Source: Chiloscyllium plagiosum
Taxonomy: Eukaryota
Assembly (NCBI RefSeq): GCF_004010195.1
Contig: NC_057756.1
Coordinates: 7,926,945-7,971,904 of the forward strand
DNA length: 44,960 nt
Direction: 5' to 3'
Of this stretch, positions 25,516 through 44,960 are shown piece by piece. The position numbers were made by a program, and so were the translations under genes. The notes beneath the pieces were generated by a model, which saw nothing but the letters and a program-made list of their open reading frames with translations, ran no database searches and had not been told where the DNA came from. Position 1 is the first letter of the stretch, and each line of letters opens with the position of its first letter.

Positions 25516-26078
25516 CAAAAATATAATGTTTCCACAGCTCTGGTGCATCCTACACCAAGACTCCTTATACAGCTTCGCTGAAACCCACGATCACTTTCAT
25601 CTGGAAGGACCTTGGAAACAGATACATGGGGACACCATCCTCTATGTTTCTTTCCTGTACACTCAGGGAAATGGTAGTAAAGTAGATCTGAGGAATGTCT
25701 AATCAGCCATGTTCTTTTTGAACAACTGAGCTGACTCAAGGGACCAAAAGACCTACTCCTGTTCTTAATTCTTATGGTGAAAGGGTCATTCTCCATTTGG
25801 ACTTGGAAATAAATTGCTGTACCTTCAGTGTCACTCTCAAAATCCTGGAGGTCCTTCTCTAACAGAATTGTAGGTTTAGCTACAGCGACATAGACAGCAC
25901 CTTCATGGGGCAGTTAGGACAGACAGTGAAGATTACACACTGTGGAATAAATATTCAAATAGTCTGTGTGGATTGTCATCTTCGAGGAGAAAGTGAGGTC
26001 TGCAGATGCTGGAGATCAAAGTTGAAACTTTATTGCTGGAACAGCACAGCAGGTCAGGCAGCATCCAGGGAACAGGAG

Positions 26079-26114
26079 ATTCGACGTTTCGGGCACAGGC
26101 CCTTCTTCAGGAAT
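26079..26114 (-). ncRNA. Minimal type I hammerhead ribozyme motif
   Basis: Reverse complement ATTC-CTGAAGA-A-GGGC-CTGT-GCCC-GAAAC-GTC-GAAT. Confidence 0.8.
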
Positions 26115-26225
26115 GAGCCTTCGAGGAGAAAGTGAGGTCTGCAGATGCTGGAGATCAAAGTTGAAACTTTATTGCTGGAACAGCACAGCAGGTCAGGCAG
26201 CATCCAGGGAACAGGGAATGAGCAC

Positions 26226-26261
26226 ATTCCTGAAGAAGGGCCTGTGCCCGAAACGTCGAAT
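26226..26261 (+). ncRNA. Minimal type I hammerhead ribozyme motif
   Basis: ATTC-CTGAAGA-A-GGGC-CTGT-GCCC-GAAAC-GTC/GAAT: stem I ATTC:GAAT, stem II GGGC:GCCC, palindromic ACGT in place of stem III; predicted cut after C26257. Confidence 0.8.
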
Positions 26262-26754
26262 CTCCTGTTCCCTGGATGCTGCCTGACCTGCTGCGCTGTT
26301 CCAGCAATAAAGTTTCAACTGTGTGGATTGTCAACCTGGTTCATGGCAGATACAGACTCTGAACTGAGGACTGTACCAATTGAATTTCCACATGGGGTAG
26401 ATACGACATATGACCAATTGCCCAACTCAGAGTTTGATTCAAATGTTCAACAATTTCCTTATACTAGGCGAAAGTAATGCTGCCTGACCAGCTGTGCTTT
26501 TCCAGTACCACACTCTCGACTCCAATTTCCTTATCACTGGCTTCTTACTTCCTCATTTTGAATTGGTGTGTCATCCTTTTCTAATTAAAAACACAAATGG
26601 AACAGCACAGGAAAGTGACACTCAGCCCGAGCAGAGTATCTCGGCACTTACTCCCCAGACAAACTGTCAGGCAAGTAACACAATTGTTGGAATTCTCTTC
26701 CACAACCACCATCATCCTTTTTTGATACTGTCAAGCTTTAAATGTATTGTTTTA

Positions 26755-27565
26755 CTGGAGGCAGTTCAGAGAAGGTTCACCAGGATAATTTCTGGTATGA
26801 AGGGATTGTCTTATGAGCAAAGGCTAAACAAGGTGGGCGGCACGGTGGCACAGTGGTTAGCACTGCTGCCTCACAGCGCCTGAGACCCGGGTTCAATTCC
26901 CGCCTCAGGCGACTGACTGTGTGGAGTTTGCACGTTCTCCCCGTGTCTGCGTGGGTTTCCTCCGGGTGCTCCAGTTTCCTCCCACAGTCCAAAAGATGTG
27001 CAGGGTCAGGTGAATTGGCCATGCTAAATTGCCCGTAGTGTTAGGTAAGGGGTAAATGTAGGGGTATGGGTGGGTTTCGCTTCGGCGGGTCGGTGTGGAC
27101 TTGTTGGGCCGAAGGGCCTGTTTTCACACTGTAATGTAATCTAAAAAAAAAGTTAGGACTGTACTCACTGTAGTTCAGAAGAATGAGAAGAGATCTGATT
27201 GAAACAAATAGGTTTTTAATGGGTTTGGCAGGGTGTGTGGATGTTTCCCCTCTTATGAGTCTAGGACCAGAGGGCACAGTCTCAGAATAAATGGATACAA
27301 ATTTAAACTCTGATAAGGAGAAATTTCTTCTTTCAGAAGGTTGAGGGTCTTTGGAACTCCTTGCCACAGTGAGCTGAGCTGGTAGAGTCCTTCTGTATAT
27401 CAAAGGCTGAAACAAATTCTTCATCATTCAGGGAATCAAGGGTGACAGACAAAACATGGGGAAGTGAATGTGAGAAATGTTGGATTAGCCATTATCAAAT
27501 TAAATGATGGAGCAGACTGAAGTGGGCAAAAAGCCTACTCGTGCTCCTCTTTCTTGCGGTCCTAA
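26755..27565 (+). mobile_element. CR1 3' fragment split by an HE1 SINE
   Basis: LEAVQRRFTRIISGMKGLSYEQRLN [SINE] KLGLYSL.FRRMR.DLIET. Confidence 0.85.
26835..27150 (+). mobile_element. HE1-type V-SINE, young full-length copy
   Basis: GGGCGGCACGGTGGCACAGTGGTTAGC head with box B GGTTCAATTCC, V-domain and HER1-like tail. Confidence 0.93.
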
Positions 27566-27742
27566 TTTAAGAACAGATTCGAGTGATTGATGCCTTTGAA
27601 ACATTTTTACTTTGAGTAACATCAGGGGATATGGCTCAAGTCTGTGAAGACATTGTCTCAAAGCAGTTCTGATCTCTCAATAGGTAAGGTCTTGTTAATT
27701 TTTTTCTTTTTCAGAAGCTGATAAAATATCTGGGAGTGCACA

Positions 27743-27782
27743 ATGATTGGGAAATCTTACTTCCTGCTGTTACTTCTTCAAG
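27743..27782 (+). CDS. Siglec-like gene, signal-peptide exon
   Basis: Acceptor TTTTTTTCTTTTTCAG|27715, ACAATG start, MIGKSYFLLLLLQ + G | GTAATG (phase 1); joins 31669 to give MIGKSYFLLLLLQAGLA-QEW. Confidence 0.85.
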
Positions 27783-28559
27783 GTAATGTCATTGTCAGCG
27801 CAGACAGCTTTGTGGTTAATAGTTTTGAAAATGATCATTCTTATTGAGCTCTGGTTGGGAACAAATTTTGCAGTGAACCAGCATAGAGGAGGAAAGAGAT
27901 CTCAAAGAGTCCAACAGTTGGTGAAAGTTACAGAGATAGGGCATAGGATAGTGGAGGACTTGGAAATAGATGGAGATAATCATAAAACTGAGGTGTTGAC
28001 AGACAAAGTACAAATGTAGGTCAGTCCATGTGGGGTGACAGGGACAATTGGATAAAAACTGAAGGGTAATGTGGATCTTGAAGCCAGAACTCTGTTAACT
28101 CTGCCTGAAGTTTGTGTCTTTTGCCAATTTCATTCTGAATGATCTCCAGCAACTCCTAGGATAGACAAGAGAGAAGTTATCCTGATTGTCTCTGATCTGC
28201 TGCACTGTGTAAATTTGCAGACTCTGAAAACATTGCAGCTCCAGAGGAGATCAATTAGTTGCTGCCTGAGAGAGCAGTGGAATCAGAGTGGAGAGGAAGT
28301 TTGAAGAGCAGGAATTAAAAGAATATTGCAAAAAGAATACATTTTCAGGGCTGTGGGGGGAAGAGGATATCATGGGGATTAATTTGAGAGGCCTTTCAAA
28401 GATCTGACTCAGGGAAATTGGATGGAATGGTCTCCATCTATGCCATATAATTCTGAAATCCAGTGATTTAAGTTCCTTACCAGTGCTGAGCTTGGGGAAC
28501 AGTCAGTCTCCAAAGTCATATCGAAATCAACAATACAACAATATGGAGGTTGGATCAGA

Positions 28560-28880
28560 AATAATCCCTTAGGCAATGAGGATCCAAAGAGATCCCACAG
28601 ACATAATGAGGATCCGAAGAGAGTAAGTAGTCAATGAAGACCGAAAGAAATTTCTCAGACAAAGGGAATCCAAAGGGATCCCTTAAATAGTAATAAGCCA
28701 AAACGATTCCCCCAGACAATGAGGATTAAGAGATCCCTTAGTATATGGAGTTCCAAATACATTCCTCAGATAATGAAGACTCAGAGAAATCCCTCAGTCA
28801 ATGAGAATCCAAAGCGGTTACAAACAGGCAATATGATCAAATTGAGGGCAATACTTTCCAAGGGGTCCTCAGTAGATTCA
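28560..28880 (+). repeat. Degenerate ~28-bp minisatellite
   Basis: About ten units resembling GACAATGAGGATCCAAAGAGATCCCTCA. Confidence 0.75.
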
Positions 28881-29199
28881 TTCTATCACTGGGAGCGAGA
28901 ATTGGAGAAACTGAGAGTGAGTGCGAAACAAGAAAGTGGGAGTTGAAGAAATGAAAAACTTAATTTTGGATTAACTAATGGAAGTGTAGCTCAGAAGATA
29001 TCCTCTCCCAGAACTCCCCAACACTTGCCCCTTTTCAAGATGACAGAATCTCTCAGTTATCATGGTTTTCAGCAACCAACCTCTGATTTCCTTTCAGTTG
29101 AGTGGTGGTGATGCGGTACACTAGGAGGCTGACAGCTGAGATACTTGGGGACGAGGGGAGCACTCAGTTTGGATACGTCAGTCAAGAACGAGAGCTTCC

Positions 29200-29500
29200 A
29201 AATCAGCAATTTTTTCAATAACTCATGAGACATGGGCATTGCTGGCTGAGTCCAGCATTTATTGCCCACTCCTCACTGCTCCTTCAGAAGGTGTGGGCGA
29301 GCTGCCTTCTTGAGCTGCTGCAGTCCATGTGCTGTAGGTAGATCTACAACACCCTTAGGGAGGGAATTCCAGAATTTTGACACAAGTGACACTGAAGGAA
29401 TGGCGATATATTATCAAGGCATGAAAGTGAGTAACTTTGGAGGGGAACATGAAGGTGGTGGTGTTCTCATGTACCTGCTGCCCTTGTACTTCTAGATGGA
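29200..29500 (-). mobile_element. LINE (L2/CR1-group) 3' fragment
   Basis: Recognised from memory as the common shark repeat end GGGCATTGCTGGC...CAGCATTTATTGCCCA; clade not verified. Confidence 0.5.
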
Positions 29501-29544
29501 AGCCATGATGTGGAGGTGCCAGTGTTGAACTGGGGTGGATGAAG

Positions 29545-29632
29545 TTAAAAATCATACAACATCAGGTTATAGTCCAATAGGTTTATTTGGAAATAAAAGC
29601 TTTTGGAGCACTGCTTCTTCATCAGGTAGCAA
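29545..29632 (-). mobile_element. Penelope-type end, second family, degenerate hammerhead
   Basis: Minus CCTGATGAAGAAGCAGTGCTCCAAAAGCTT...AATAAACC; related pieces at 29980-30012, 41710-41778 and 42300-42330. Confidence 0.6.
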
Positions 29633-30287
29633 GTGGAGCCCCTCCAGCCTGAGAAATAAGCCAATAAGTTGATCCAATTGTGAAATGCACTCCACTTTCC
29701 TGCCTGCCCCCCCGCCCCTACCCCCCCCGCCCCCCCCCGCATGTCTTTCTTGTCAATCAAAGCTTTTCCTGTCTTAGCACTGAATATATTGAATGATCCA
29801 TCTATCACCATTCTCAGGTGCAGATATGTCCAAACATTCAAAATTCTTCATTATTTCAGTCTTGAAGACACTCCATCCATCCCCAATGCTCAGTAGCAGC
29901 AGTGTGTACTATCTGCAAGATGCACTGCAGAAATTCACCAAAGATTCTCAGACACCACCTTCCAGACCCTTCCACCTGGTAGGTTTTGGAACGCTGCTCC
30001 TTCATCAGATAGCTGTTATATCTAATCCAATGGACTCACAATTATCTGCAATTCTTGGTCTCTCTGTTCTGTCTCGTCATTGTTTACATCAATTACATTG
30101 TCCTCAAATAGTCCTCCAAGTGATTGCTGGCTTCCTAAATCCCACAATTAAAACTGTCTTCAAGACAGTACACTTATGTTAGGAATATGAAACTGTATCA
30201 TAAAATGTGATTGAGAGTCTGATTTAGATGTGAAGCCATCTAAAAAGGAGTTCTTCAAACAAAACGGTTTAAGAATCACTGCCTTAG

Positions 30288-31305
30288 GTCATGAGTAAGG
30301 CATTCAACAAGGTTCCCCATGGGAGACTGGTTAGCAAGGTTAGATCTCATGGAATACAGGGAGAACTAGCCATTTGGATACAGAACCGGCTCAAAGGTAG
30401 AAGACAAAGGGTGGTGGTGGAGGGTTGTTTTTCAGACTGGAGGCCTGTGACCAGTGGTGTATCACAAGGATCGGTGCTGGGTCCATTGCTGTTGTTCATT
30501 CATATAAATGATTTGGGTGTGAACAAAAGAGACATAGTTAGTAAGTTTGGAGATGACACCAAAATTGGAGATGTAGAGGACAGCAAAGAAGGATACCTCA
30601 GATTATAAGGGAATCTTGATCAGATGGTCTGATGGGCTGAGGAGTGGCAGATGGAGTTTAATTTAAATAAATCCGAAGTACTGCATTCTGGAAAATCAAA
30701 TCAGAGCAGGACTTGTACACTTAATGGTAAGGTCCTAGGGAGTGTTGCTGAATAAAGAGACCTTGTAGCACAGGTTCTTGGTTCCTTAAAAGCAGAGTAA
30801 CAGGTAGAAAGGATAGTGAAGAAGGCATTTGGCATTCTTTCCTTTATTAGTCAGAGCATTGAGTATAGGAATTGGGAGATCATATTGTGGCTGAACAAAG
30901 CATTGGCTAGGACACTTTTGGAATTCTGGTCTCCTTCCTAACAGAAACTTGTGAAACTTGAAAAGGTTTAGAAAAGATTTACAAGGATGTTGCCAGGGTT
31001 GGAGGATTTTAGCTGTAGGGAGAGTTTGAATAGGCTGGGGCTGTTTTCTCTGGAGCATCAGAGACTGAGGGGTGAGCTTATAGAGATTTATAAAATCATG
31101 AGGGGCATGGATAGGATACACAGACAAGGTCTTTCCCCTGTGGTGGGGGAGTCCAGGACTAGAGGGCATAGGTTCAGGGTGAGAGGAGAAAGATATAAAA
31201 GGGACCAAAGGGGCAACTTTTCCATACAGAGGTTGGTATGAGTATGGAATGAGCTGCTAGAAGAAGTGGAGGAGGCTGATACAATTACAACATTTAAAAG
31301 GTATC
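30288..31305 (+). mobile_element. CR1/HER1 LINE ORF2 3' part
   Basis: SKAFNKVPHGRL...PVTSGVSQGSVLGPLL..IHINDL...SKFGDDTKIG; stops present. Confidence 0.93.
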
Positions 31306-31668
31306 TGAGAGCTGTGACAAATTAGCGACTCATCATGGTGATAAGTTGTGGCTTCTGAGGGTTCCTCATTCATTGTGCTGCCCTGTAAATCAGCATAGAA
31401 TGTATCTCCATTGGCACATGTTTTAGACACTCTGTTGGATGGAAAACTGGCATTACTAAACAGGGGCATGAGAACTTTGAGCCAATGTAGAATGAAGTTG
31501 TCCACTCCTGTGTCCAGGGTTCCCTCCATCAACTGCATAACCTTGGTCAGATTTTTGTGTATCCTGTAGATGGTCCACACTGCAGGCACTCTGTACCAGT
31601 GATGGAAGACGTGAGTCTGGTGGATCTACAGGGCATCCAGCTCTAAATACTGATATTTCTCCCCGCAG

Positions 31669-32034
31669 CTGGACTGGCACAAGAGTGGAAAGTCCGCATT
31701 CCAGGTAAGGTGATGGTACACAAAGGTTCCTGTGCACAAATTCCATGTCATTATACTTACCCTTCTCATCTGACAAACCAACCGCGCATTGGAATCTGGT
31801 TTAACAATGAAAATGGGAAAACATCATCAACAGCCTTTCACTCCAAGGACCATAGTCACGAGTTGGCACGGTTCCGTCATCGAACCTGGCTGTCTGGAGA
31901 TCTGAAAGATGGAGATTGTTCCTTGATTATAAAAGACATCACACTGGAAGATGCAGGACCTTATTACTTCAGGATAGAATTTGACAGAGTGAATAGTTAC
32001 AACTACTTTCCTGTAACCCGGCTTCACGTTTCTG
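31669..32034 (+). CDS. Siglec-like gene, V-set exon V1
   Basis: TTTCTCCCCGCAG| ... TCTG|GTAAGT, phase 1-1, open; GLAQEWKVRIP..GSCAQIPC..GIWF..LSGDLKDGDCSLII..EDAGPYYFRIE: Siglec Cys pattern (B-E and interdomain Cys, no F-strand Cys) and essential Arg. Confidence 0.93.
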
Positions 32035-32334
32035 GTAAGTGCTAAGTTATAATTACTTGACAACCCTATTGTACATTCAAAGGGAAAGGACACACCGTCA
32101 GGTCAGAATTGTTAGTTTCATAGCTGTGTTAATCAGGTGACGCAGCTTTCAGGATTTCACCTATTTGTTCTCCCAAATCCACAAACTTAGGACAGGTGAT
32201 AGCATCCACATCAGAACCTAAACCGAAACTGAGCTGCAGACAATGAATTTTAATGCATCCTCCCTTCCTTGCGTCATCCAGCAACACCATCCCCAGAGAC
32301 TCGTGTGGTGACCATGTGGCATTTATCATCAGAT

Positions 32335-33442
32335 CAGCCTGGTAGGCTGATGGAGAAGGTGAAGTCACATGGGGTCCAGGGTGTACTAGCTAGATGGATA
32401 GAGAACTGGCTGGGCAACAGGAGACAGAATAGTAGTGGAAGAGAGTTTCTCAAAATGGAGACCTGTGACCAGTGGTTTCCACGGGGATTCATGCTGGAAC
32501 TACTGTTGTTTGTGATATACATAAATGATTTCAAGGAAGGTATAGGTGGTTTGATTAGCAAGTTTGTAGATGACGCAAAGATTGGTGGATAGCAGAAAAT
32601 GAAGGGGACTGTCACAGAATACAGCAAAATATAGATAGATTGGAGAGTTAGGCAGAGAAATGACAGATGGAGTTCAATCCAGGCAAATGCAAGATGATGC
32701 ATTTTGGAAGATCCAATTCTGGAGTGAACTGTACAGTAAATGGAAAAATCCTGGGGAAAGTTGATGTACAGAGAGATCTGAGTGTTCAGGCCCATTGTTC
32801 CCTGAAGGTGGCAACGCAGGTCGATAGTGGTCAAGAAGGCATATGGCATGCTTTCCTCCATTGGATGGAGCATTGCGTAACGAGTTGGCAGGTCATGTTA
32901 CAGTTGTATAGGACTTTGATTCGGCCACATTTGGAATACTGGTCGCAACATTACCAAATAGATGTGAATGCTTTGGAGAGGGTGCAGAGGAGGTTCACTA
33001 GGATGTTGCCAGGTATGGAAGGAGCTAGCTATGAAGGGAGGTTGAGTAGGTTAGAATTAGTTTCATTGGAAAGATGGAAATTGAGGGGGGGCCTGATTGA
33101 GGCCTAGCACGTCATGAGAGGTATAGACAGGTGGATAGCAAGAAGCTTTTTCCCAGAGTGGGGTCTTGATTACTAGGAGTCACGAGTTCAAGGTGAGAGG
33201 GGAAAAGTTTAAGGGAGATATGCATGGCGTTCTTTACACAGAAGGTAGAGGATGCCTATAATGTGTTGCCAGCAGAGGTGGCAGATGATAGCATCATTTC
33301 TTGACAGATACATGAATGGGTAGGGAGCAAAGGGATACAGACCCTTAGAAAGTAGGCAACAGGTTTAGACAGAGGCTCTGGATGGGTGCAGGCTTAGAGG
33401 GCCAAAGGGCCTGTTTCTGTGCTGTAATCTTCTTTGTTCTTT
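32335..33442 (+). mobile_element. CR1/HER1 LINE ORF2 3' part with tail
   Basis: GRLMEKVKSHG..WIENWL..IYINDF..SKFVDDAKIGG..MEFNPGKC..LERVQRRFTRMLPG. Confidence 0.92.
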
Positions 33443-33789
33443 GCTGCACTGCGACCTGACCGCCTCCTCTGGAACGTTCTCCTCCTTTGAATATTTAAGC
33501 GCTTTCACCTTTATTTCAAAGTCCTTTTCCATCATCATAAGAATGCCATAAGATTGCTCTCACCAGGATATCTTCACTGCTTCCCTCCCTCAGCATCTGC
33601 AACAAAAGACTTCCCATCCTCAGAAATGTCAAACTCCGTGTCAGCTCATCATGCGTCACTGCTCTAACACACTTCTGGCTGGTCTTCCACATTCTACCCT
33701 CTAGAAAGTCCAGGCCACCCAAATCTCATTTTACACCAAGTCCTGACCTGCTACCATCCACTGCATTTGCTGTCCTACACTCATTCCTC

Positions 33790-35110
33790 ATCAAGCATAG
33801 AATCACAGAGTCATACTGCAGGAAAAGATCTTTCAGTCCAACTCGTCCATACTGACCAAATTTCATAAACACTAGCCCCATTTGCCTGCATTTGGCCCAT
33901 ATCCCTCTAAACTTTTCCAATTTATGTACCTGTCCAAAAGCCTTTTTATTGTGGTAACTGTTGTTTCCTCTGGCAGTTCATTCCACATACAAACCACCCA
34001 CTGTGTGAAAAAGTCACCCCTCTGGCCCCTATTGAATCTTTCTCCTCTCAGCTTAAATTATGCTCCCTAATTTACATCCTTGTTACTTCCCTCTTCTTGT
34101 CATCTCCTTCAGCTCCATGGGAGATCCGGAGTTCTGTCCTTGGGTAGAGACTTGTCTTTACTCGTCCCACCATTGGTGGATTGACATTCTAGCTACCTGG
34201 AGCCTGGAGTTCAGGAATTCCCTCCCTCACCTCCCTGCCATTCTCTTCTGATATCCTGCTTAAGACCTTAAGACCATAAGAAATTGGAACAGGAGTAGGC
34301 CATTTTGCCCATTGAGCCTGCTCTGCCATTCAGGAAGATCATGGCGGATCCAATATTCCTCATGTCTACTTCCTGAATTTTCTCTTTTAGCCTTGATTCC
34401 TCAACTAATCAAAAATCTACACATTTCGGCCTTAAATATGTACAAGGCACTACCCCACACCTCTCTGTAGCAAGGAGGTCAAAAAACCTCCAACTGTCCA
34501 ACATTAGAAATTCCTCCTTATCTGAGTCTTAAATAGGTGACTTTTTATTCTGCAACTAGGCCCTCTTGTCTCAGACTTTCTTATGAGAGGAAACATTACC
34601 TGAGAAGTCCTTTCTTATTTGTTTCAATGAGGTGACTTCTCTTTTTTTGAAAACTACAGTGAGTAGAGTCCCAAACGGTTCAGCCTTTGCTCCAAAAACA
34701 ACCTCGCCATACCGAGGATCATCCGAGTGAACCTTCTCTCAACTACCTCTAATGAAATGATATATTTCCTTACATCAGAGAATCTAATCTGCTTGCAGTA
34801 CTCCAGATGTGATCTCACCAACACTTTGTACAATTATCCTCCTACCCCCTTAAAATAAGGACCAACATTCCATTTGCCTTCCTGATCCTTTGCTGCCCAT
34901 GTCTGTTAGCTTTCTGCGTTTTGTGCACAAGTATCCATACGACCCTTTGTGTTACAGTTTTCTGCAATTTTTATCAATTTAAAAATACTCTGTTCTTCAG
35001 TTCTCTCTTCCAGAGTGAACAATTTTGCATTTTCCCACAACATATTCCATTTGCCAAACTTTCGTCCACTGACTTAACAAATCAATAACCCTATGCAAAC
35101 TGTATGCATC
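33790..35110 (-). mobile_element. Two minus-strand CR1 3' fragments (~33790-34065 and ~34260-35110)
   Basis: Reverse-complement tails CATAGAATCACAGAGTCATAC.. and CCATAAGAAATTGGAACAGGAGTAGGCCAT..; decayed C-terminal motifs. Confidence 0.75.
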
Positions 35111-35229
35111 TCTCTCGTAATCTGCCTTTCCACCAATACCACCTTGGCTTTTCATCAGTTGCCCTAATATCACTTCATGTGACTTGGTATACTTTTCCTG
35201 ACTATGGTTTTTTTAAAATAACTTGGGAC

Positions 35230-36960
35230 AGGAAGATTAGTGTGGAGCATGCTCAATACTCCAGGACACAAGAAAGACGTGGTGTTAGTTCTCTTGAAGA
35301 ACATTACCATGGATATGTCCCCAGGGCCCAACGATACCTTCCCTCAAGTTATTGTGAAAGCTAAGAGAGGAGACTGCTGGGGTCTTGACCAAGATCTTTG
35401 CATCCTCACTAGTCACTGGAGAGGTCAGAGGGCTGACGAGTAGCTAATATTGTTCCTCTGTTCAAGAATCCCTTCTTGGGGGATAATCTAGGAAACTATA
35501 GACTGGTGAGTTTCATATCTGTGGTTGAGAAACTATTGGAGAGATTTCTTAAGAATGGGATTTACGCGCATTTGGAAAAACATGGCCTAATTAGGGACAG
35601 TCAGCATGGCTTTGTGCCGAGCAGGTCTTGCCTTACTCACTTGACTGAATTTTTCAAGGGGGTGATGAAGTTGATCAAAGAGGGTGGAGGAGTGGATGTT
35701 GTCTACATTGCTTTCAGCAGGGCCCCTCATGGTAGGCTCACCTAGAAGATTAAGATTCATGGGATACATGGTATCTTGGCTGCTTGGACTGAGAATTAGC
35801 TTGGCCATAGAAGGCAGAGGATAGTGGTGGAAGGGTGTTTTTCTGGCTGGAAGTCAGCAAGGATCGGTACAAGATCCTTTGCTGTTTGTAATTTATATAA
35901 AATGACTTGGATAAAAATATTGAATGTGGAGGGGCGGTTACTAAGTTTTCAGAAGGCACAAAGTTCAGTGGAGTTGTGGACAGCGTAGAAGGTTGTCAAA
36001 GGATACAGCAGGATACAGATCAATTGCAGATATGGATGGAGAAATAGAAGATGGCGTTTAATCTGAGTAAGTGTAAGGTACTGCATTTTCAGAGATTAAA
36101 TGTTAAGGAAAAGCATACAGTTAATGGCAGGACTCTGAACAGCAGTAAGGGAGAGAGGGATCTTGAGGTTCAAGTCCTTAACTCCCTGAAAGTGGCCACG
36201 CAAATGGATAGGGTGGTGAAGAAGGCATATGGCATGCTTGCCTTTATTTGTTGGGGAGAAAGTGAGGTCTGCAGATGCTGGAGATCAAAGTTGAAACTTT
36301 ATTGCTGGAACAGCACAGCAGGTCAGGCAGCATCCAGGGAACAGGAGATTCGACGTTTCGGGCACAGGCCCTTGGGAATTGAGTACATGATGCAGCTTTG
36401 TAAGACTTTGTTTCGGCCACACATGGAGTATTGTGTTCAATTCTAATCGCCAGATCACAAGAAGGATACAGAGGCTTTGGAGAGTATGCTCAAGAGGTTT
36501 ATCAGGATGCAGCCTAGATGCGAGGGTGTGAGCTATTAGGAGAGGCCAGAAAAATTCAGTTTGCTTTTTCTGGAGCAGCGGAGGCTGAGGGGAGTCTTGA
36601 CAGAATTCTATGAATTTATAAGATGCATAGATCGGATTGATGGTAAGAATGCTTTTTCCCAGAGTTGAAATATCTAATACCAGGGAGCATGAATTTAACG
36701 GTGAGGTGGGCAAAGTTCAAAAGAGATGTGAGAGGCAAGTGTTTTACACATTGAGTGATAAGAATCTGGAATGCGTTGCCAGGTATGGTGGTGGAGCAGA
36801 TGCAATCGGGGTGTTTAAGGGACTTTTAGATAGCACATAAATATACAAGAAATGAAGGGATATGGACCAAGGACAGACAGAAGGGGCTAGTGCAATTTGA
36901 TGTCATGTTCAGTACAACATTGTGGGATGAAGAGCCTGTTCTTGTGCTTCCTGTTCGATA
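35230..36960 (+). mobile_element. CR1/HER1 LINE ORF2 remnant
   Basis: GNYRLVSFISVV.KLLE...SQHGF...RSCLT.L.EFF; KCKVLHF; VVKKAYGMLAFI; RPHMEYCVQF. Confidence 0.92.
36256..36371 (-). mobile_element. Young Penelope-type terminal fragment inserted in CR1
   Basis: By eye identical to most of 25987-26102; flanked by TTGGG (36251-36255, 36372-36376); truncated inside the hammerhead. Confidence 0.85.
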
Positions 36961-37056
36961 CAAAAAGAGAAATTGCTGGAAAAGCTCAGCAGATCTGGCA
37001 GCACCTGTGCAGAGAAATCAGTTAACTTTCGGTCCTGGTGACCTTTCCTCAGAACG
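36961..37056 (-). mobile_element. Penelope-type end, third family, degenerate hammerhead
   Basis: Minus GTTCTGAGGAAAGGTCACCAGGACCGAAAGTTAAC followed by GCTGCCAGATCTGCTGAGCTTTTCCAGC. Confidence 0.6.
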
Positions 37057-37270
37057 GTTCTATGTTCTATATTTTGTAAATTGAGTGTGTCATATAAATA
37101 CAATGTTGGAACACATTTTGCTAATTACAAGCGTGATCTGCAAGTTTATCGTGCCTTCTAATAATTTGTTCTAATCCACCTCAGCACTGACCATCCCTCA
37201 ATCCAATCTCATCTGTAAATTTGGAGTCTACAAGTCACTTGATACTAAATACGAATGTTTCTCTCCCCAA

Positions 37271-37639
37271 CTGGACTGTCACAAGAGTGGAAACACGATT
37301 GTCCTCAAGAGGTGACAGTGCAGGAAGGTTCCTGTGCACAGATTCCTTGCCATTACAATTATCCATCATGTCTGGAAAATGAACCACGCAATGGAGTCTG
37401 GTTTAACAGTGAGAACCAGAAGCCCTGGGATCCCATAGCCTTTCACTCCAAGGATCACAAACACGAGTTGCCACGGTTACGCAATCGGACCCGGCTGGCT
37501 GGAAACCTCAAAGATGGAGACTGTTCCCTGATTATAACCAACGTCAAACGAGAAGATGCAGGACCTTATTTTTTCAGAGTAGAATTTGAAAATGGCCCCA
37601 GTTTTAACTATTATCCTGTAACCCAGCTTCATGTTTCCA
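37271..37639 (+). CDS. Siglec-like gene, second V-set exon V2 (open frame, non-canonical AA acceptor)
   Basis: GLSQEWKHDCPQEVTVQEGSCAQIPC..GVWF..LAGNLKDGDCSLII..EDAGPYFFRVE; donor TCCA|GTAAGT; homologous acceptor reads CTCTCCCCAA|CT. Confidence 0.75.
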
Positions 37640-38418
37640 GTAAGTGCTGTGTTATAATTGCTCAATAGTTCACATCCAACGCTCAACGGGAAACAACATA
37701 AATTGTGACATGTGATAGTAACACAAAACACAGTGTGTGATAACGCCATGTCTGATTTTCAGTAACCGGGAGGTAGCTTCCAGTTCAGTCCTGGATAAAC
37801 CTCTGATACTGACTTGAAGATTAATGATTCAATGTATTGACTCAGTCCATCAATGCAATAAGGTGATCCACTCTTACTTATCTCTCAAATCCTGTTTAAA
37901 GGTCTTAAAAAGACAAAATAGACTCACATTTCTGTCACGCCTTTCACCATCTCAGGGTATTCCAAAGAGTTTCATAGACAATAAATTAATTCTTTAATTG
38001 GAGTTGCTGCTGCCATGAAGAATTCACAGCAGCCAAATATTGCACAGCAAGCTCCAAAACCAGAATTTTGACAAAAATCTGATTGCATGTTCCATTTTTC
38101 TGGCTGAGATTGTTACAAATAGGTGCTGCCCTGCTGCACACAGGATTTAATTGGAATATGACAGATTTTGAAGAATGGGAGGAGCCTGTTGTCCATGGGC
38201 TCTGAGCTGCTCCCCCACCTCACCCAGTACTGTTCAATCATGGGTGTCAGAGTGAAAATGTGTTTAACCGAGTGAGATACACTTCAAGTCAGAAATAAAG
38301 GAAGTCTTTATTTGTATTAATTGTACTCAGTTCTTAGATCATGCTGGGAAAAGTGCTTTCTCGCATAGGACTGTGATTTCTTCATGTTATATTCACCTAA
38401 AAGGATCTATTGTGTTAG

Positions 38419-38700
38419 ATTTCACAGATAAACCCATGATAGTCCCTGAGGAAATTATCGCAGGAAAGCAAGTGAATCTAAGCTGCACATTCAACACAAC
38501 ATGCATTAGAACAACTCCTGTCTTAACCTGGGACACTCATGGATCAGTCTCAAACACTGTAACTCAGCATGGTGTCACTCTGACCTATACTTCTGTTCTG
38601 AGCCTGATCCCATCACCCAGATACCAGGGACAAACTCTCACCTGCAGAGTGAGTTATCCAACTGTTTCTTCAGAGGAGACCCTCACACTGACAGTACAAT
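38419..38700 (+). CDS. Siglec-like gene, Ig domain-2 exon (C2/C1-type)
   Basis: TGTGTTAG|AT (alternative in-phase acceptor at 38428) ... CAAT|GTAAGT; DFTDKP..GKQVNLSCTFNTTC..PVLTW..TSVLSLIPS...GQTLTCRV; second Cys fits the Siglec interdomain disulfide. Confidence 0.93.
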
Positions 38701-39969
38701 GTAAGTATGGACTTCATTCATTCTACAATGGAACAACAAGCTAAATAGGCAAAGCAAGGTCCCACAAGCAGCATTCTAGTTTTTTACAAATAAAAACTGA
38801 CCATAGAGAACTGTAATAATTGCTGAAAAGAGGCATCTATTTGAAGTCTTGCCTCTTGCACTCATTAGGACCGAAACACAAGAAAATACTCTATCAAGGA
38901 AAAAACAATTCACAAAGCGAGTGAAAGGGCTGCTGAGTGGAGGATGGTGGTTTACACAGACTATGTCCTGGCAGCCGGAACCGTTAAATGTCTCATTTAA
39001 CAGATAACATTGAGAACTGGTTAAAATGACTCTGATTGCTCAGCGCGTTCCCATGGGATTCAGCAAAGATTGTCTATTTCCACAAATCTTTCTAATTGAA
39101 AATGTTGTGCCCATTTGAGTTGATCATGTGACCACAGCATGTGAGAAACCTATTCCAAATTTATTTCCTATGTAGTTGTTAGCTCAGTCAAGATTATTGC
39201 TTTAATATTGTCCATCAGTGGAGCCATATTTAATGCTGTACACTAAGGCTTGGATAGCTGCTGGCCAGACAGTTATTACTGCAGCAGAGATGGACATTGC
39301 TCATAGGGAGAAGACTCCAACAGTACTGTCTTGGAAATTCAAGATTTGACTCAGTAATTTGCCTTTTCACGTAACCTTTGAACTTACCTATTTACATTGG
39401 AGAAGTCAAAGATTCTGATGGAATTAAGTAAAATAGTTATTGAGGGAAAGTTAGATTATTTACTGACCTTTTTCCTGAGGAACAATTCAACTGACTCTGT
39501 ACTTACCCACCTCCCCCATCAACAAATACACTTATCGCCAGTCCCAGTCCCTGACCAGTCACCCGCGCTCGCTCCCAGCCCCAATCCTGATCTGACATCT
39601 CTCTTTCACCTCTCACTCTTTGCCCTGCTCCCCCATTCCCTCACTCAGGACCTGACACCATATTTCACCCACACCAAACCCGCTGCTTCCTTCCTCATCT
39701 CTGAATCTGATCTTCATAGGCAGTCAGAATGGCAGTTTGGTCTCATTTCTGAAGCAGTGTTGATCAGAATCTCTTGTCACAAATACATTCTCCTTCTGTA
39801 AAGAAAGAATAGAATGGCATTCTGTATGAGATTGCCACTCTTCAGAGCATCTGGCACTCTATTCTCAGTTTTACATTAAGAACTCAGGACTGAATGGTGC
39901 CAAAGGATCAGTTAAATTTCTTAAGAAAGCATCTGGGACTATGATTGATGACTAAGATGTTATTTCCAG

Positions 39970-40135
39970 CTGTGCAGCACTCCCTCAACAATAACCCTCT
40001 GACAATATGCCATCCCCTCAGAACTGACCATCAGACAGCGCAGCAGTCCCTCAGTACTGACTTTCCGACAGGGCAGTGCTGTCTCAGTACTGACCTTCTG
40101 ACAATGTGGCACTCCTTCAGTATTGAACCTCTGTT
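39970..40135 (-). repeat. 33-bp minisatellite array
   Basis: About five units of the same 33-mer. Confidence 0.9.
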
Positions 40136-40352
40136 ACTGAACTAAAGTGTCTGTCTGCATTACATGCATGAAGTAACTGACGCTAATGTCACTTTTTTTC
40201 TTGTTCTCAGAGTCTCTCAAAGTTCCTTACACTGAAAATGTGTGAACTGATCTCTCTTTGCTTTCAGATGCACTGCAGGATCTCTCAATTACTAGATAGA
40301 TATGGGGTCTTGCTGCGCACTTTGCTCACAATATTCTCTTCCCTTGTTTTAG

Positions 40353-40634
40353 ACTCACCACGGAATCTCTCAATTACTTCTCCTGCTGTGATTAAAGCTT
40401 CATCAATCAACATAATTGAGGGGAATTCTGCAGTGATAATCTGCTCTGTTGAGAGCTTCCCAGCTTCTAACCTGACGTGGAGACATCTTAACGTCACAAT
40501 GAACAGAACAAGTTCCAACAATGAGCTGTGGTTGGAGATTTCTTCCATTACATGCATGGAGACAGGAGACTATCAGTGTGTGGCAGAGAATGAACATGGG
40601 AAAATGGAGGGATCCTTAACTATCGCTGTGGAAT
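40353..40634 (+). CDS. Siglec-like gene, Ig domain-3 exon (C2/I-set); gene continues beyond the window
   Basis: CTCTTCCCTTGTTTTAG|AC ... GAAT|GTGAGT; YSPRNLSI..EGNSAVIICSVESFPASNLTW..LWLEI..TGDYQCVAENEHG. Confidence 0.93.
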
Positions 40635-42184
40635 GTGAGTATACACAAGACTTCAAAATTGCTCACACACATATGAATACATATGTATTTCCCTGTAGAC
40701 GAAAGTGATTGGTCCTCTCTCTCTGGTGCACTGAACTATAAATATGAGCTTTAATTCAATGTGGATAGAATGGAAACTATTTGTTAAGAAAATGCTACGT
40801 GGAACTTGCAGGTACCTGCCCCCTGGGTTCTACATTTATTTGTGATGAGATTTGATTTGTGTCAGTGGAATAAGAATTTCAATGGCTGCTACTTACAATA
40901 ATGCTGAGAAGTAAAGGCAAGGTTTGTTGCAACATTTTTAATATCTCACTCAGATCAGTTCAAAGGTCTGAATCTGTGTAAGTTTGAATCAGTTCAACAG
41001 TTAATGGGGGAGAAAGTGAGACTGTGAGAAACAGGAGCTGGCTCCATGCAAGAAAAGGATCGTTAGCTGTGCTGCTGAGAAAGTTATGGAAGGATCCTGA
41101 TTCTGTCTGGTTGAAGTTTAGGGTTAATTCCAGGAGCAGTTTTAAAGCTAAATGAAGTAATGAACCAAACAAGGTTCTGGAAGCTAGTAGACGAGGCTAA
41201 ATGACACAGTTAGGACTCAGGCTTTGATGCTATATTGGGTGTTCAGAAGAGGTTTATGCTTTATTAATAATTCAGAAAGTGGGGAACTGGAACCCCATGT
41301 AAAGTTTGAATGAGATTTTACAATCCACAGGACCATTAATATTTTGAAGTGTTGCTGAGAAATCTATGGGATTTTGGAAATTTGGATGTACATTGCACAT
41401 ATATTGTCGATTGTGTTACTGTTCTAACTTTAGATTAGAGTCAAAAAGTGTGGCCATGGAAAAAGCTCAGCAGGTCAGGCAGCATTTGAGGAGCAGGAGA
41501 GTTTCGGGCAAAAATCAGGAATGTGAAGGAGGAAAGGGGCTGAGAGATAAGTAGATGGGTGAGGGAAAGGTTGGGGGAGGGGCGAAGAAGATAGGTGAGA
41601 TGTAGATAAGTGGATGTAAGTAGGAGGTGATTGTGCTAGGTTGGTGGGGAAGATGGAGTGGATGGATGGGAAGGAAGATAGATAGCTAAGTCAGGTCAAG
41701 AGGGCGGTGTCAAAAATCAAACGACACCAGGTTTATTTGAAATTGCAAGCTTTCAGAGCTCCGCTCCTTCCTCGGGCATGGTAATGATAGGGAGATGTAA
41801 GACATAATATTTATAAGCAAAAACTTAACTTTAAAACTACCTGTCCTTGTTGGGTCCTTTAATCAGTTCGGAGGTGGACTGCTGATTAAATTGCAAAATC
41901 CAGATACTTTTCAAGCCTTTGCCCCGAGATAATGAAGATTTTATACAGAGAGAGACAGAGAGAGAGAGAATTGAAGTGGCACCTCACACCTAAAGTGCAT
42001 TGTCTAACCTGAGATATCATCCCTTGTACATTGTTAAAACATTTAATTATCTAGGGACAAAGACTTGAAAGGAATCTGAATTTTGCCCTTCAATCATTAG
42101 TTTACCTCCTGTTTAAAGATTCGACAAGGAGAGCTAGTTTTAAAGATGCTCGCATTTTACTTTTAAGTATAGTGTCTCATACCT

Positions 42185-42271
42185 GGAAATGTGTTGCTGG
42201 AAAAGCGCAGCAGGTCAGGCAGCATCCAGGGAACAGGAGAATCGACGTTTCGGGCATTAGCCCTTCTTCAT
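42185..42271 (-). mobile_element. Penelope-type terminal fragment with 15-bp TSD
   Basis: TAGTGTCTCATACCT at 42170-42184 and 42272-42286; minus TGAAGAAGGGCTAATGCCCGAAACGTCGATT. Confidence 0.8.
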
Positions 42272-42697
42272 TAGTGTCTCATACCTCCCTATCATACCAC
42301 GCCTGGGGAAGGAGCGGAGCTCCAAAAGCAGATGCTGAAAGTTGTGACTTTGAATTAGATAAGTCAGCAATAATTCATAAGTGTGCCTCCTGCAAAGCAG
42401 TGGAAACATTCAGAAGAAAGGAGGGATGAGGAAGAACCTTCAGATCAGTAAGAACCAACACAATAGATCTTGAGAATAAAGACTACAGAACTGTTTTTCA
42501 TGTTATCCTTCCACCCATGTGTTTTTTTTTCATTTGGGTAATGAGGGGTTTATAAACAGATGTTAGAGTTTTAATTTATCGAGGTTACTGAATTTAATTA
42601 GATTGTTTACCTGTTCCCAGAATAGAATGACTTGTAGGGAATAGTGATTCTTGTGAAATACAAAAACCTGGTCCCTGCTTTCTATCAACCTGGGTCT

Positions 42698-43376
42698 TGT
42701 GAGAAACAAAGCTCACTCACTTCAATACTTTCAGTCCGAGACAAGATCTGAATCAATAGTGTCATTTATTTTACACTTGCAAGTGGTTGTGATGTCCACA
42801 AGGCAGGGACAAAACACACTGAATTCGATATTTATATAATTTGGTTCCTACATATTTTTTCTTATTTCATTGTTTCCCCCCCTGTTTACATCTTCCACTT
42901 CCCTAAGACCGGTACCACACTTGCAAGTGGGTGTGATGTCCACAAGGCAGGGACAAAACACACTGAATTCAACAAATACTCGATATTTATATAATTTGGT
43001 TCCTACATATTTTTTCTTATTTCACTGTTTCCCCCCCGTTTACATCCTCCACTTCCCTAAGACCGATACCCATTACTCCTGTTTATCTCTTGTCTTATCC
43101 GGCCTTGTCTGTGACAAAATGCTTATTTCTGACCTCACAAGGCCGTTTGACCTCATCCCATCCTTTGCTTACCATTATCTACTCCCTCCATCTGTGCTGC
43201 CCCTCACAGCATCTTATCACTAAGCCCTTTTAATTGGGGTTTGTTCCTGTGTTTCTGTAAAAGTGGGAAACAGATGTTTATACCTACTGTTTGTACAGGC
43301 GTATCCAGCTTAACTTCATCCCATCACAACATCTTATCTATTTGCCCGTAATATCTACCATTGTTTTGCTGTCACA
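42698..43376 (-). mobile_element. Endogenous retrovirus 3' LTR
   Basis: TGTGA...TCACA termini, TATATAAA boxes (two, from an internal duplication), AATAAA about 70 nt before the 3' end; directly follows the env stop. Confidence 0.8.
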
Positions 43377-43400
43377 TTTCATTCTGGCATACAATTTTAG

Positions 43401-44960
43401 CTAATACCCAAAATTCGCAAGCATCATTTCAGAGATTTCATCCATCTTGGTCTCACTCATCTCCTCATTATTTAGCCGATAAAGTTCCTCTGTCTGATTC
43501 CCTCTTAGGGGCGTCTGTTTCATCAAGGCTGTTTCAATCAGTCTTTGGGTGAGCCATCGTATACAGGGTATGATACAACAGCCAATGGCCACCAATACCC
43601 CGACTACTACTATCAGGGAAGTAAGGATAGAAATCACCACCCCCTTCTACCTTCCAAACTAGGATTCAAGCCATCCCGTGAGAGATGTGTCTACTCCTGA
43701 ATTCTCAGCCAGTTCCTCTGCTAAGGTAGTCAATCCCCTTAAGGCCCGAGTAATTGAACCATCAGGTGCAGTGTTAAAGGTGCAACAGCTTCCTCCTAAC
43801 ATCACACACACACCCCCTTTTTTCTGCTAAAATCATATCAAGGGCCATTCTGTTCTCCCATGCCATCCTACTCATCGCATCAAGCTGTTCTGATATTCCT
43901 TTAACCGCCTCTCTTGTATAATTTATAAATCGCTGTTGATTATAGAAAATGTAATTTATCCAATCTACATTTTTATTAATTGTTACCCACCAAAAGAGAG
44001 CTGACGCAAAGCCTGCTGCAGTCTGGTTATGAGCCTTGAATTCATCAGGTACCCCCCCCGCCCCTTGGGACTCCTACCGAATCGAGATAAATCCTGTCAT
44101 CAAAAGAAGTGTCTAACAGTGATCTCTTACCCCTTCCCTTTTTCCCTACTATCTTTTCCTTCTCAAATGCCAGGGTAAATGGAATTGCCAATTGTACAAT
44201 TGCACATATCCCTCTCCAATCCGGAGGTAGGGTGGGTCTCAATATTTTGCCTCCACAGTACCACCACAGATCCGCTCGGGGAACCTTTAATGCTGAGTAG
44301 TTCCCTCCTTTCTCCGTTTCGGTAACATTCTTAATCTCTGTACATAATTTCAGCTCCCCCAAATCTCTAGCCCGGCTTGTATCTCGTCTATGCACCCATG
44401 ACGTGTGATTTCCAACTGCGGCGGAAAATGTGGGGTGAATTTGTACATCTTTCTTCTCCAAGGGAGGGAACATCAGAGATAGGGACGTACAATTCCTATC
44501 ATTCCATGCAGTCTCATCCTGATACAGGGCTATCATACATTTCATGCCCTTCCTGTCTCGCTTCCACCCGAGTGGAAAGGAAACCACCTGGGCCACTGGC
44601 CTACTGGAGGCTCTTGTTCAGACTTTTTACAGTATACTTTACCCATTCAAACCAGGCATTTGCATCCCCGTACCCAGTCTCTATCTCGATGGTCTGTTTC
44701 AAATCCTTTACCTCTATAATTTTTACTACTGTAGGATCATTGGGAGGAGTGAAAGGTTGTATCTCATTACCCAGTAATTCTACCCATTTTTCCCTGTCCT
44801 ATGCTAATTCGAAAACAACAGCCCACAAACACCTTCCTATTTGCTTTCATTTCAATCCCAAATGTTTCATTTAATTGTACCTCATAAGTGCCACCTCCCA
44901 AAACTGCTTCGTGCCATGTGGTTTTCCTTATCGTTAAATATATGGGGTTACACATTTTAT
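43401..44960 (-). pseudogene. env: Endogenous retrovirus gamma-type env, disrupted, 5' end outside the window
   Basis: Furin site RGKR/SL; GVPRG(fs)VPDEFKA.NQ.AAGF..FWWVTINKNVDWINYIFYNQQRF; ISD-like MAWENRMALDMILAEK; CX6CC (CVMLGGSCC); TM helix; homopolymer frameshifts and two TAG stops. Confidence 0.93.

What the first reader, a model, noticed from the sequence alone, without database searches (positions are those of the whole stretch)
27743..40634. One leader, two intact first-domain V-set exons: a Siglec-like gene with switchable or doubled sialic-acid-binding heads
Seen: V1 (31669-32034) and V2 (37271-37639) both start with the signal-peptide remainder (GLAQEW/GLSQEW), share intron flanks, and keep the F-strand Arg and Siglec Cys pattern. 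Both are free of stops and frameshifts at about 65% aa identity (79/122, hand count). Differences cluster in strand A, the CC' loop (NENGKTSST vs SENQKPWDPI) and the FG region (DRVN vs ENGP). I found no second leader or C2 exon in the LINE-filled interval between them. Known: CC' loops tune Siglec glycan specificity, and human SIGLEC12 has tandem V domains. Inference: either mutually exclusive ligand-binding cassettes on a shared constant region, or a V-V-C2-C2 receptor.
Basis: partly seen in the sequence, partly recalled or inferred. Interest (0 to 1): 0.8.

Follow-up and report, generated by a model that had tools for sequence, protein, structure and literature searches.

The report
Shark Siglec gene with two lectin heads
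This shark gene for a sugar-sensing immune receptor carries two copies of its binding-domain exon that related sharks splice one after the other into a double-headed receptor, not a switchable one, and in this genome the second copy has a damaged splice signal.

Summary
One leader (27743-27782) is followed by two open Siglec-type V-set exons, V1 (31669-32034) and V2 (37271-37639). They share 79 of 122 residues, and no second leader or C2 exon lies between them.

The "switchable" reading is not supported; the "doubled" reading is.
- RefSeq orthologues in Chiloscyllium punctatum and Hemiscyllium ocellatum are L-V1-V2-C2-C2-TM-tail.
- In two related organisms, intron-free contigs join 32034 directly to 37271.
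- 23 of 120 elasmobranch Siglec-like models carry 2-4 adjacent V domains.
- V2 belongs to an old "non-first" V type with an extra BC-loop cysteine.

In this genome V2 is therefore either skipped or spliced at the next AG, 15 nt downstream and in frame. No RNA of this species covered the stretch, so this stays open.

The gene is a new member of a known kind (tandem-V Siglec, as in human SIGLEC12), and its close relatives are already annotated. The scan noted a second two-V Siglec-like gene 138 kb upstream in the same genome (s1-883858); I did not check it.

The parts
27743..27782 (+). Leader exon (coding part): MIGKSYFLLLLLQ plus the first base of the next codon; donor CAAG|gtaatg, phase 1
   Evidence: Sequence read; tblastn of orthologue P0151 residues 1-14, 13 of 14 identical. 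The only other leader-like hit in the window is 1664-1623 on the minus strand.
31669..32034 (+). V1: first Siglec-type V-set exon (366 nt, phase 1 to 1), acceptor cag|, donor |gtaagt
   Evidence: Open frame; Pfam V-set and Ig_CD22; PDB Siglec-10 and sialoadhesin E about 1e-14 with Arg aligned; 6 of 121 residues differ from P0151; covered by spliced contigs of X1 and X4.
32035..37268 (+). V1-V2 intron, repeat-filled, with no leader, V or C2 remnant
   Evidence: tblastn found nothing beyond chance-level hits. Repeat depth reaches hundreds of thousands, while the unique bins have zero depth in X1 and X4 and 11-30 in the DNA-like run X6. Weak RVT_1 at 35437-35742.
37269..37270 (+). Lesion at the V2 acceptor: AA where V1 has AG and where the relatives splice
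   Evidence: Sequence...TGTTTCTCTCCCCAA|CTGGACTG against V1 ...ATTTCTCCCCGCAG|CTGGACTG. The relatives' contigs start their V2 piece exactly at 37271. The X6 DNA contig covers 37233-37459 with one unlisted difference, probably near its end, so AA is likely but not proven in that run.
37271..37639 (+). V2: second Siglec-type V-set exon (369 nt, phase 1 to 1), donor |gtaagt intact; has the extra Cys33 (PSC) and a lineage-specific Cys10
   Evidence: Open frame; Pfam; PDB Siglec-8, -7, -5 and CD33 E about 1e-14 with Arg aligned; 111 of 122 residues identical to P0151; joined to V1 in X1 and X4 contigs; Cys columns.
37284..37285 (+). First AG downstream of the V2 polypyrimidine tract; an exon starting at 37286 stays in frame (15 nt shorter)
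   Evidence: AG scan. Its use is inferred and not observed.
38419..38700 (+). C2-set exon 1 (282 nt, phase 1 to 1) with the three-cysteine pattern of Siglec domain 2
   Evidence: Translation; Pfam C2-set_2 E 2e-7; 90.6% identical to P0151; boundaries from sequence.
40353..40634 (+). C2/I-set exon 2 (282 nt, phase 1 to 1); the TM and tail exons of the orthologues are not found in the rest of the window
   Evidence: Translation; Pfam Ig_3 and I-set; tblastn of P0151 and P0257.

Best explanation
[quoted passage not shown] That gene encodes a membrane Siglec whose mRNA carries both V exons in series: leader-V1-V2-C2-C2-TM-tail. The two V exons are an old duplication, not alternative cassettes. V1 is of the 'first/only head' type. 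V2 is of a 'non-first head' type shared by three shark orders. Each keeps the sialic-acid Arg, so the ancestral product is a double-headed lectin. I infer that V2's extra BC-loop Cys33 takes the place of the C2-domain cysteine that normally bonds to the first head. In this genome a single change (AG to AA) removed V2's acceptor. V2 is then either skipped, giving an in-frame single-head L-V1-C2-C2 receptor (my odds about 45%), or spliced at the first downstream AG. That AG is 15 nt into the exon and in frame, and would trim the vestigial signal-peptide remainder AGLSQ (about 40%). The remaining odds go to a G allele or a base error. Shown: the exon anatomy, the lesion in the assembly, and the tandem splice in relatives. 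Inferred: the outcome in this species, the disulfide, and the lectin function.
For: The exons are open and Siglec-like, with Arg and the cysteine pattern. RefSeq proteins P0151 (XP_072409733.1) and P0257 (XP_060708619.1) read ...HVS|AGLSQEWK..., that is V1 then the whole of V2, then C2, C2, TM and tail. X1 contig 1 (1054 nt) lies on 31667-32034 at its letters 566-933 and on 37271-37639 at 197-565. X4 contig 8 (1427 nt) lies on 31667-32034 at 155-522 and on 37271-37638 at 523-890. Both therefore join V1 to V2 with no letters between. The unique intron bins have depth 0 in X1 and X4 but 11-30 in the DNA-like run X6, so these contigs come from spliced RNA. X4's listed differences reproduce 16 of 17 changed residues of P0257; the 17th needs a second base that the table hides. 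V1 against V2 gives dN 0.223, dS 0.707 and ratio 0.315, with 25/24/42 differences by codon position and one in-frame 3-nt indel. After 45 random substitutions an open frame survives in only 15-20% of trials. 23 of 120 elasmobranch models have 2-4 adjacent V domains. Cys33 occurs in 29 of 35 non-first V domains, 0 of 25 first-of-several and 3 of 101 single domains. In the tree V1 sits inside a starred set of mostly first or single domains, and V2 sits outside it with later-position domains of orectolobiform, lamniform and carcharhiniform sharks. The acceptor reads AA, and the next AG at 37284-85 is in frame.
Against: There is no RNA of the window's own species: the single-cell run X11 laid 0 reads, which is no test. 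The tandem splice is therefore shown only in relatives, where the acceptor must be intact. Contigs drop rare isoforms, so a minor V1-only or V2-only form in relatives is not excluded. Whether AA holds in other individuals is unknown. The one DNA-like contig over the site may come from the same animal as the assembly, and its single difference is not listed. The Cys33 association is phylogenetically clustered: the pairs test had only 4 independent pairs and cannot reach significance. The tree rests on 121 columns with many open forks. RefSeq multi-V models are automatic predictions.
Confidence: 0.8

Rival explanations
1. Mutually exclusive ligand-binding cassettes: the leader splices to either V1 or V2, and each then splices to the shared C2 exons, giving two receptors with different glycan specificity.
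For: All exons are phase 1, so L-V1-C2 and L-V2-C2 would both be in frame. V2 keeps a signal-peptide-like start, GLSQEW. Differences concentrate in strand A and the CC' region.
Against: In both relatives the only contig covering V1 also carries V2 directly behind it. All RefSeq isoforms seen for the orthologue contain both. V2 has the cysteine typical of non-first domains. Here V2 has no AG at the site the leader would need.
Confidence: 0.05
2. V2 has long been a dead pseudo-exon, a relic of exon or gene duplication that is never spliced in any species and is open only by chance.
For: It lacks an AG acceptor in this assembly. An early draft model (P0006) could use only half of it. V2 in the window lineage shows 7 private amino-acid changes against 3 in V1, including a cysteine seen in 0 of 161 related domains.
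Against: It is spliced in two relatives. The dN/dS of 0.315 across the V1/V2 split, the in-frame indel and the conserved branch-point, tract and donor flanks argue for long purifying selection. An open frame after that much neutral change is expected in only about 4-20% of trials, even before indels are counted. The excess of private changes is not significant (Fisher p 0.27 on the listed places).
Confidence: 0.05
3. Two separate genes or an assembly collapse: V1 and V2 each belong to their own gene, and a leader and C2 exons are missing between them.
For: The family is clustered, with paralogue remnants in the window: a leader-like hit at 1664-1623(-), a V-like hit at 14003-13917(-) and a C2-like hit at 20347-20548(+). 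The interval is repeat-rich.
Against: The same V1-then-V2 order and direct splice occur in two other organisms and in two chromosome-scale RefSeq annotations. DNA-like contigs of X6 tile unique parts of the interval with 0-3 differences. The only N run in the window is 5740-6040.
Confidence: 0.03

Closest known systems
[quoted passage not shown]
   Same: Orthologous exon by exon: against P0151, V1 is 115/121 identical, V2 111/122, C2a 90.6% and C2b about 86-88%. The order is the same: leader, V1, V2, C2, C2.
   Different: Those models splice V2 at the canonical site (…VS|AGLSQ…), whereas the window reads AA there. The window's V2 has a private Cys10. The TM and tail exons lie outside the window. 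These are automatic models; I saw no experimental paper on them.
Human SIGLEC12 (Siglec-XII)
   Same: A Siglec with two N-terminal V-set domains followed by C2-set domains (passage in PMC6288428).
   Different: Human Siglec-XII has lost the essential Arg (R122C; same passage, and a passage in PMC13358205), whereas both shark heads keep it. Common descent of the duplication was not tested here and is unlikely from what is known of primate CD33-related Siglecs (recalled). The shark orthologues' tails carry two YxN tyrosine motifs rather than the ITIM/ITSM pair (read; the motif names are recalled).
Single-head CD33-related Siglecs, sialoadhesin and MAG (solved V-set structures)
   Same: Sequence similarity of each head at E about 1e-11 to 1e-15, the canonical Arg on strand F, an N-terminal Trp aligned to sialoadhesin Trp2, and the three-cysteine pattern.
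   Different: They have one V-set domain per chain, and none has the extra BC-loop cysteine of the non-first shark V type.
Mutually exclusive exon systems (for example FGFR2 IIIb/IIIc; recalled, not searched)
   Same: Duplicated, same-phase, ligand-binding Ig exons lying side by side.
   Different: Here both exons are present in one transcript in the relatives, so the defining exclusivity is not met.

Membership tests
[quoted passage not shown] | V-set domain with the essential Arg on strand F | tested here: met
   V1 YYFRIEF and V2 YFFRVEF align to the Arg of Siglec-10, sialoadhesin and Siglec-8. Arg is kept in 148 of 161 related domains.
[quoted passage not shown] | Unusual cysteine pattern: two Cys on strand B plus one on strand E in the V domain, and three Cys in the following C2 domain | tested here: met
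   GSCAQIPC…GDCSL in both heads and NLSCTFNTTC…TLTC in C2a. The pairing itself was not testable.
[quoted passage not shown] | V-set followed by C2-set domains, a TM segment and a tyrosine-motif tail | tested here: inconclusive
   The C2 exons are present. TM and tail are seen only in the orthologues P0151 and P0257 and were not found in the window.
[quoted passage not shown] | Binds sialylated glycans | not testable with these tools
   Needs glycan arrays or binding assays.
Tandem-V Siglec (SIGLEC12-like architecture) | Two V-set domains in one mature mRNA or protein | tested here: inconclusive
   Met in two related organisms (contigs of X1 and X4) and in RefSeq models. In the window's own genome the V2 acceptor reads AA and no RNA was laid (X11: 0 reads).
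Tandem-V Siglec (SIGLEC12-like architecture) | Orthology with mammalian SIGLEC12 | not tested
   No mammalian sequence was put in the tree. RefSeq's names 'Siglec-12/13' are automatic labels.
Mutually exclusive cassette exons | The two exons never occur together in one mRNA | tested here: not met
   V1 and V2 are adjacent in the same contig in X1 and X4.

The most novel reading that the evidence does not exclude
Galeomorph sharks, and independently rays, have an undescribed class of multi-headed Siglecs with 2-4 stacked V-set lectin domains. It is built from a dedicated, ancient 'internal head' V type that keeps its own sialic-acid Arg. This type has a BC-loop cysteine that would disulfide-bond to the head above it, in the way a C2 domain normally does. 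The window's gene would be a natural experiment within that class: a one-base acceptor loss that is either removing the second head or shortening the V-V linker by five residues.
Probability: 0.4. Interest if true: 0.6.

Novelty: new member of a known kind. Interest (0 to 1): 0.4.

Why it matters
The double-headed form matters for how avidity and specificity for sialoglycans were built early in jawed-vertebrate immunity. Two heads, each with the binding Arg, could read two glycan features at once. The multi-V models found across sharks and rays suggest this design is common there, whereas in mammals it is known only from SIGLEC12. Siglecs of cartilaginous fish appear barely in the literature I could search. 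For the scan itself the main lesson is a correction. Two same-phase V exons behind one leader in this gene family mean tandem domains, not a switch, and the same pattern noted 138 kb upstream (s1-883858) should be read in the same way. The acceptor lesion offers a simple test case for exon loss against cryptic-site rescue.

Tried and rejected
- **RNA of the window's own species:** the raw single-cell run X11 laid 0 reads on 31655-37654, which is no test. No other RNA holder of organism C was on record.
- **Truncated difference table:** table 3 lists only part of the differences (170 not shown) and seems to hide those within about 30 letters of a piece's end. The synonymous/non-synonymous counts therefore cover 14 of 15 (V1) and 17 of 23 (V2) differences for X4, and 7 of 20 and 8 of 20 for X1. 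The state of 37270 in X6 is inferred from the absence of a row.
- **Internal V1 donor idea** (CAG|GTAAGG at 31704/31705, from s1-885986): not conserved. X4 reads A at 31705, which removes the GT, and V1 is continuous in both relatives' contigs. I rejected it as a conserved mechanism; it is untested in this species.
- **Phylogeny-aware test of 'non-first position goes with Cys33':** only 4 independent pairs, so no significance is possible.
- **Relaxed constraint on V2 in the window lineage:** the counts are suggestive (5 non-synonymous to 1 synonymous, against 3 to 4 in V1, at listed places) but not significant (p 0.27).
- **Rfam at gathering threshold on 27000-44960:** no family.
- **Pfam on the envelope-like ORFs at 43777-44617(-):** no family.
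- **Literature:** five searches gave no listing on shark or ray multi-V Siglecs. The library lacks most subscription journals, and supplements are closed; Supplementary file 9 of PMC8455134 may list shark Siglec families, but I could not see it.
- **Structure prediction:** not run, because the tool returns no coordinates and could not test the disulfide.
- **Splice-site scoring (MaxEnt type):** not available offline, so the skip-versus-cryptic odds rest on general knowledge (recalled).


Full report
**What is in the sequence.** On the + strand a short leader (27743-27782, MIGKSYFLLLLLQ, donor CAAG|gtaatg) is followed by four phase-1 exons. These are V1 31669-32034, V2 37271-37639, a C2-set exon 38419-38700 and a second C2/I-set exon 40353-40634.
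- V1 and V2 are open in the frame set by the leader.
- Both match Pfam V-set and the CD22-type first Ig domain above the curated cut-offs, and the two later exons match C2-set_2 and Ig_3/I-set.
- Against solved structures the best matches are Siglecs only. V1 matches Siglec-10 and sialoadhesin at about 1e-14. V2 matches Siglec-8, -7, -5 and CD33 at about 1e-14. In both, the F-strand Arg aligns to the canonical sialic-acid Arg.
- tblastn with every exon and with the full orthologous proteins found no further leader, V or C2 between the two V exons.
- The interval is repeat-filled, with a weak reverse-transcriptase fragment.
- The only N run in the window is 5740-6040.

The V2 exon is preceded by ...TGTTTCTCTCCCCAA, where V1 has ...ATTTCTCCCCGCAG. 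The branch-point-like CTAAAT and the pyrimidine tract are kept, but the acceptor AG reads AA. The donor is intact. The first AG after the tract is at 37284-85. An exon starting at 37286 is in frame and 15 nt shorter. Flank similarity between the two exons is confined to the splice-signal neighbourhood: 20/30 upstream and 22/30 downstream, falling to background beyond about 60 nt.

**Age and constraint.**
- V1 against V2 gives dN 0.223, dS 0.707 and a ratio of 0.315. The differences by codon position are 25/24/42, and the single length difference is 3 nt.
- Random substitution leaves the frame open in 15-20% of trials after 45 changes and in 4-6% after 90, before indels are counted.
- V2 was therefore a selected coding exon for most of its history.

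**Relatives.** The joined spliced model of the window was not built or searched. I searched exon by exon.
- The V2 exon alone, run against 1.84 billion representatives, found proteins with two to four V stretches at the top of the list.
- The closest proteins are from Chiloscyllium punctatum. P0006 is a 2018 draft model with V1 plus half of V2. P0151 is RefSeq XP_072409733.1, 572 aa. Its 90% cluster also holds Hemiscyllium ocellatum XP_060708619-21 (576 aa) and an isoform with another N-terminus.
- Both full models read leader-V1-V2-C2-C2-TM-tail with the junction ...HVS|AGLSQEWK.
- The window differs from P0151 at 6 of 121 V1 residues and 11 of 122 V2 residues, so it comes from a related species that is not the same one.
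- No closer protein was listed among the best 120 of 156.
- The TM and tail exons are not in the window.

**Transcript evidence.** The look-up of sequencing runs gave no RNA holder on record for the source organism C. It did give small-share holders in two other organisms. I laid X1 (organism A), X4 (organism B), X6 (organism C, DNA-like) and X11 (organism C, raw single-cell RNA) on 31655-37654.
- X1 contig 1 (1054 nt) lies on 31667-32034 with its letters 566-933 and on 37271-37639 with letters 197-565.
- X4 contig 8 (1427 nt) lies on 31667-32034 with letters 155-522 and on 37271-37638 with letters 523-890.
- In both contigs V1's last base is followed at once by V2's first base.
- The contigs run on for 196 and 537 letters past V2, off the laid stretch, and I did not see what those letters hold.
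- The unique intron bins (32055-32254, 33455-33654) have depth 0 in X1 and X4 but 11.6 and 30.1 in X6. X1 and X4 are therefore spliced-RNA assemblies, although the tool only guesses that they are RNA.
- No other contig covers V1 in those runs.
- X4's listed differences translate into the residues of P0257 at 16 of 17 changed codons. The 17th needs a second base that the table hides. This supports the RefSeq model independently.
- X11 laid nothing, which is no test.
- X6 matches the window with 0 differences over 31655-32216. It has one unlisted difference over 37233-37459. Since weaker rows are listed, that difference probably lies near the contig's end, so X6 most likely reads A at 37270. This is not proven, and X6 may be the assembly's own animal.

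**The family.**
- Of the 120 elasmobranch Siglec-like proteins listed, 23 carry two (15), three (6) or four (2) adjacent V domains scoring at least 100 bits. They come from ten species of sharks and rays.
- At the column of V2's Cys33 (…YPSC…, BC loop), Cys is found in 29 of 35 non-first V domains, 0 of 25 first-of-several and 3 of 101 single V domains. The raw Fisher p is 9e-23.
- The trait is clustered on the tree, however (6 changes), and the pairs test has only 4 independent pairs.
- In the domain tree (161 rows, 121 columns, many open forks), V1 falls inside a starred (96) set of 73 mostly first or single domains. V2 falls outside it, with its two orthologues (99) and among later-position domains of orectolobiform, lamniform and carcharhiniform sharks.
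- Some Mustelus later domains and the ray domains look like separate, younger duplications.
- By analogy with the C2 domain's BC-loop cysteine, which bonds to the first strand-B cysteine of a Siglec V domain (recalled from CD33 annotation, not tested), I infer that Cys33 bonds V2 to V1. A V2 used as an alternative first head would leave that cysteine unpaired.

**This genome.** By parsimony against the two RefSeq orthologues, the window lineage has 3 private amino-acid changes in V1 and 7 in V2. One of the V2 changes is a Cys at position 10, where 0 of 161 related domains have Cys. At the listed places the window-private changes are 3 non-synonymous to 4 synonymous in V1, and 5 to 1 in V2. This fits relaxed constraint but is not significant (p 0.27). 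The frame is still open, so any loss is recent.

From general knowledge of 3' splice-site mutations (recalled), the usual outcomes are exon skipping or use of the next AG. Both are in frame here.
- Skipping gives a standard single-head Siglec, in which V1's cysteine can pair with C2a.
- The +15 AG gives ...HVS-E-WKHD..., keeping the Trp that aligns to sialoadhesin Trp2. This is two residues shorter than the shortest natural linker seen (…VSAQEWKG… in catshark models).
- I put skipping at about 45%, cryptic-site use at about 40%, and a G allele or base error at about 15%.

**Comparison and novelty.**
- Human SIGLEC12 is the known Siglec with two V-set domains, and it has lost its Arg (passages in PMC6288428, and PMC13358205).
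- The shark gene works like that architecture, with both Args kept. Orthology with SIGLEC12 was not tested and is unlikely.
- The orthologues' tails carry two YxN tyrosines. Other paralogues carry LLYASI/TEYAQI-type motifs (read; the motif names are recalled).
- Five literature searches listed nothing on shark or ray multi-V Siglecs.
- The gene is thus a new member of a known kind and is already modelled in RefSeq for close relatives. The switchable-head idea is not supported.

**Limits.** The difference table is truncated. There is no RNA of the source species. The tree is short. The disulfide and lectin activity are inferred.

Noticed in passing
window 43404-44617 (- strand): Three adjoining ORFs (43404-43646, 43777-44073, 44048-44617) read like a retroviral envelope gene, with a hydrophobic membrane anchor and a stretch …LDMILAEKRGCVCDV… that recalls the conserved transmembrane-subunit motif (recalled). 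Pfam gave no family for the two ORFs I scanned. They lie downstream of C2b, probably in the next intron of the Siglec gene.
   Followed up: partly
window 1623-1664 (-) and 2091-2183 (-): A second leader-like exon (MIGKSYFLLSFLQV, 11 of 14 identical to the orthologue's leader) and a tail-like stretch sit on the minus strand. They suggest a paralogous Siglec-like gene running the other way at the window's start.
   Followed up: no
window 13917-14003 (-) and 20347-20548 (+): Weak V-set-like (…CFLKFYKLRLEDSDNRYFYVDVE, no Arg at the Siglec position) and C2-like (…ICKALHTCPNNRPKLTWSQ…) remnants are probably decayed exons of family members (E 0.04-0.05).
   Followed up: no
window 36255-36454 (also about 26040-26300 and 42100-42250): A short repeat that translates as …STAGQAASREQEIRRFGHRP… has by far the highest depth in all three contig runs (up to 873,682 in X1). 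Another reader called the copy at 25964-26333 hammerhead-bearing. Rfam at gathering threshold found nothing in 27000-44960; I did not scan the 25964-26333 copy.
   Followed up: partly
window 31701-31710: V1 contains a strong-looking internal donor, CCAG|GTAAGG. It is not conserved, because organism B reads A at 31705, and it is not used in the relatives' contigs.
   Followed up: partly
window 31669-31692 vs 37271-37294: The first 24 nt of V1 and V2 are 22/24 identical, against 75% for the whole exons. This could reflect local gene conversion or a shared splicing element; it is unexplained.
   Followed up: no
window 30288-30605 (+): A reverse-transcriptase fragment (RVT_1, 30.4 bits, just above the cut-off) lies in the leader-V1 intron.
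   Followed up: partly
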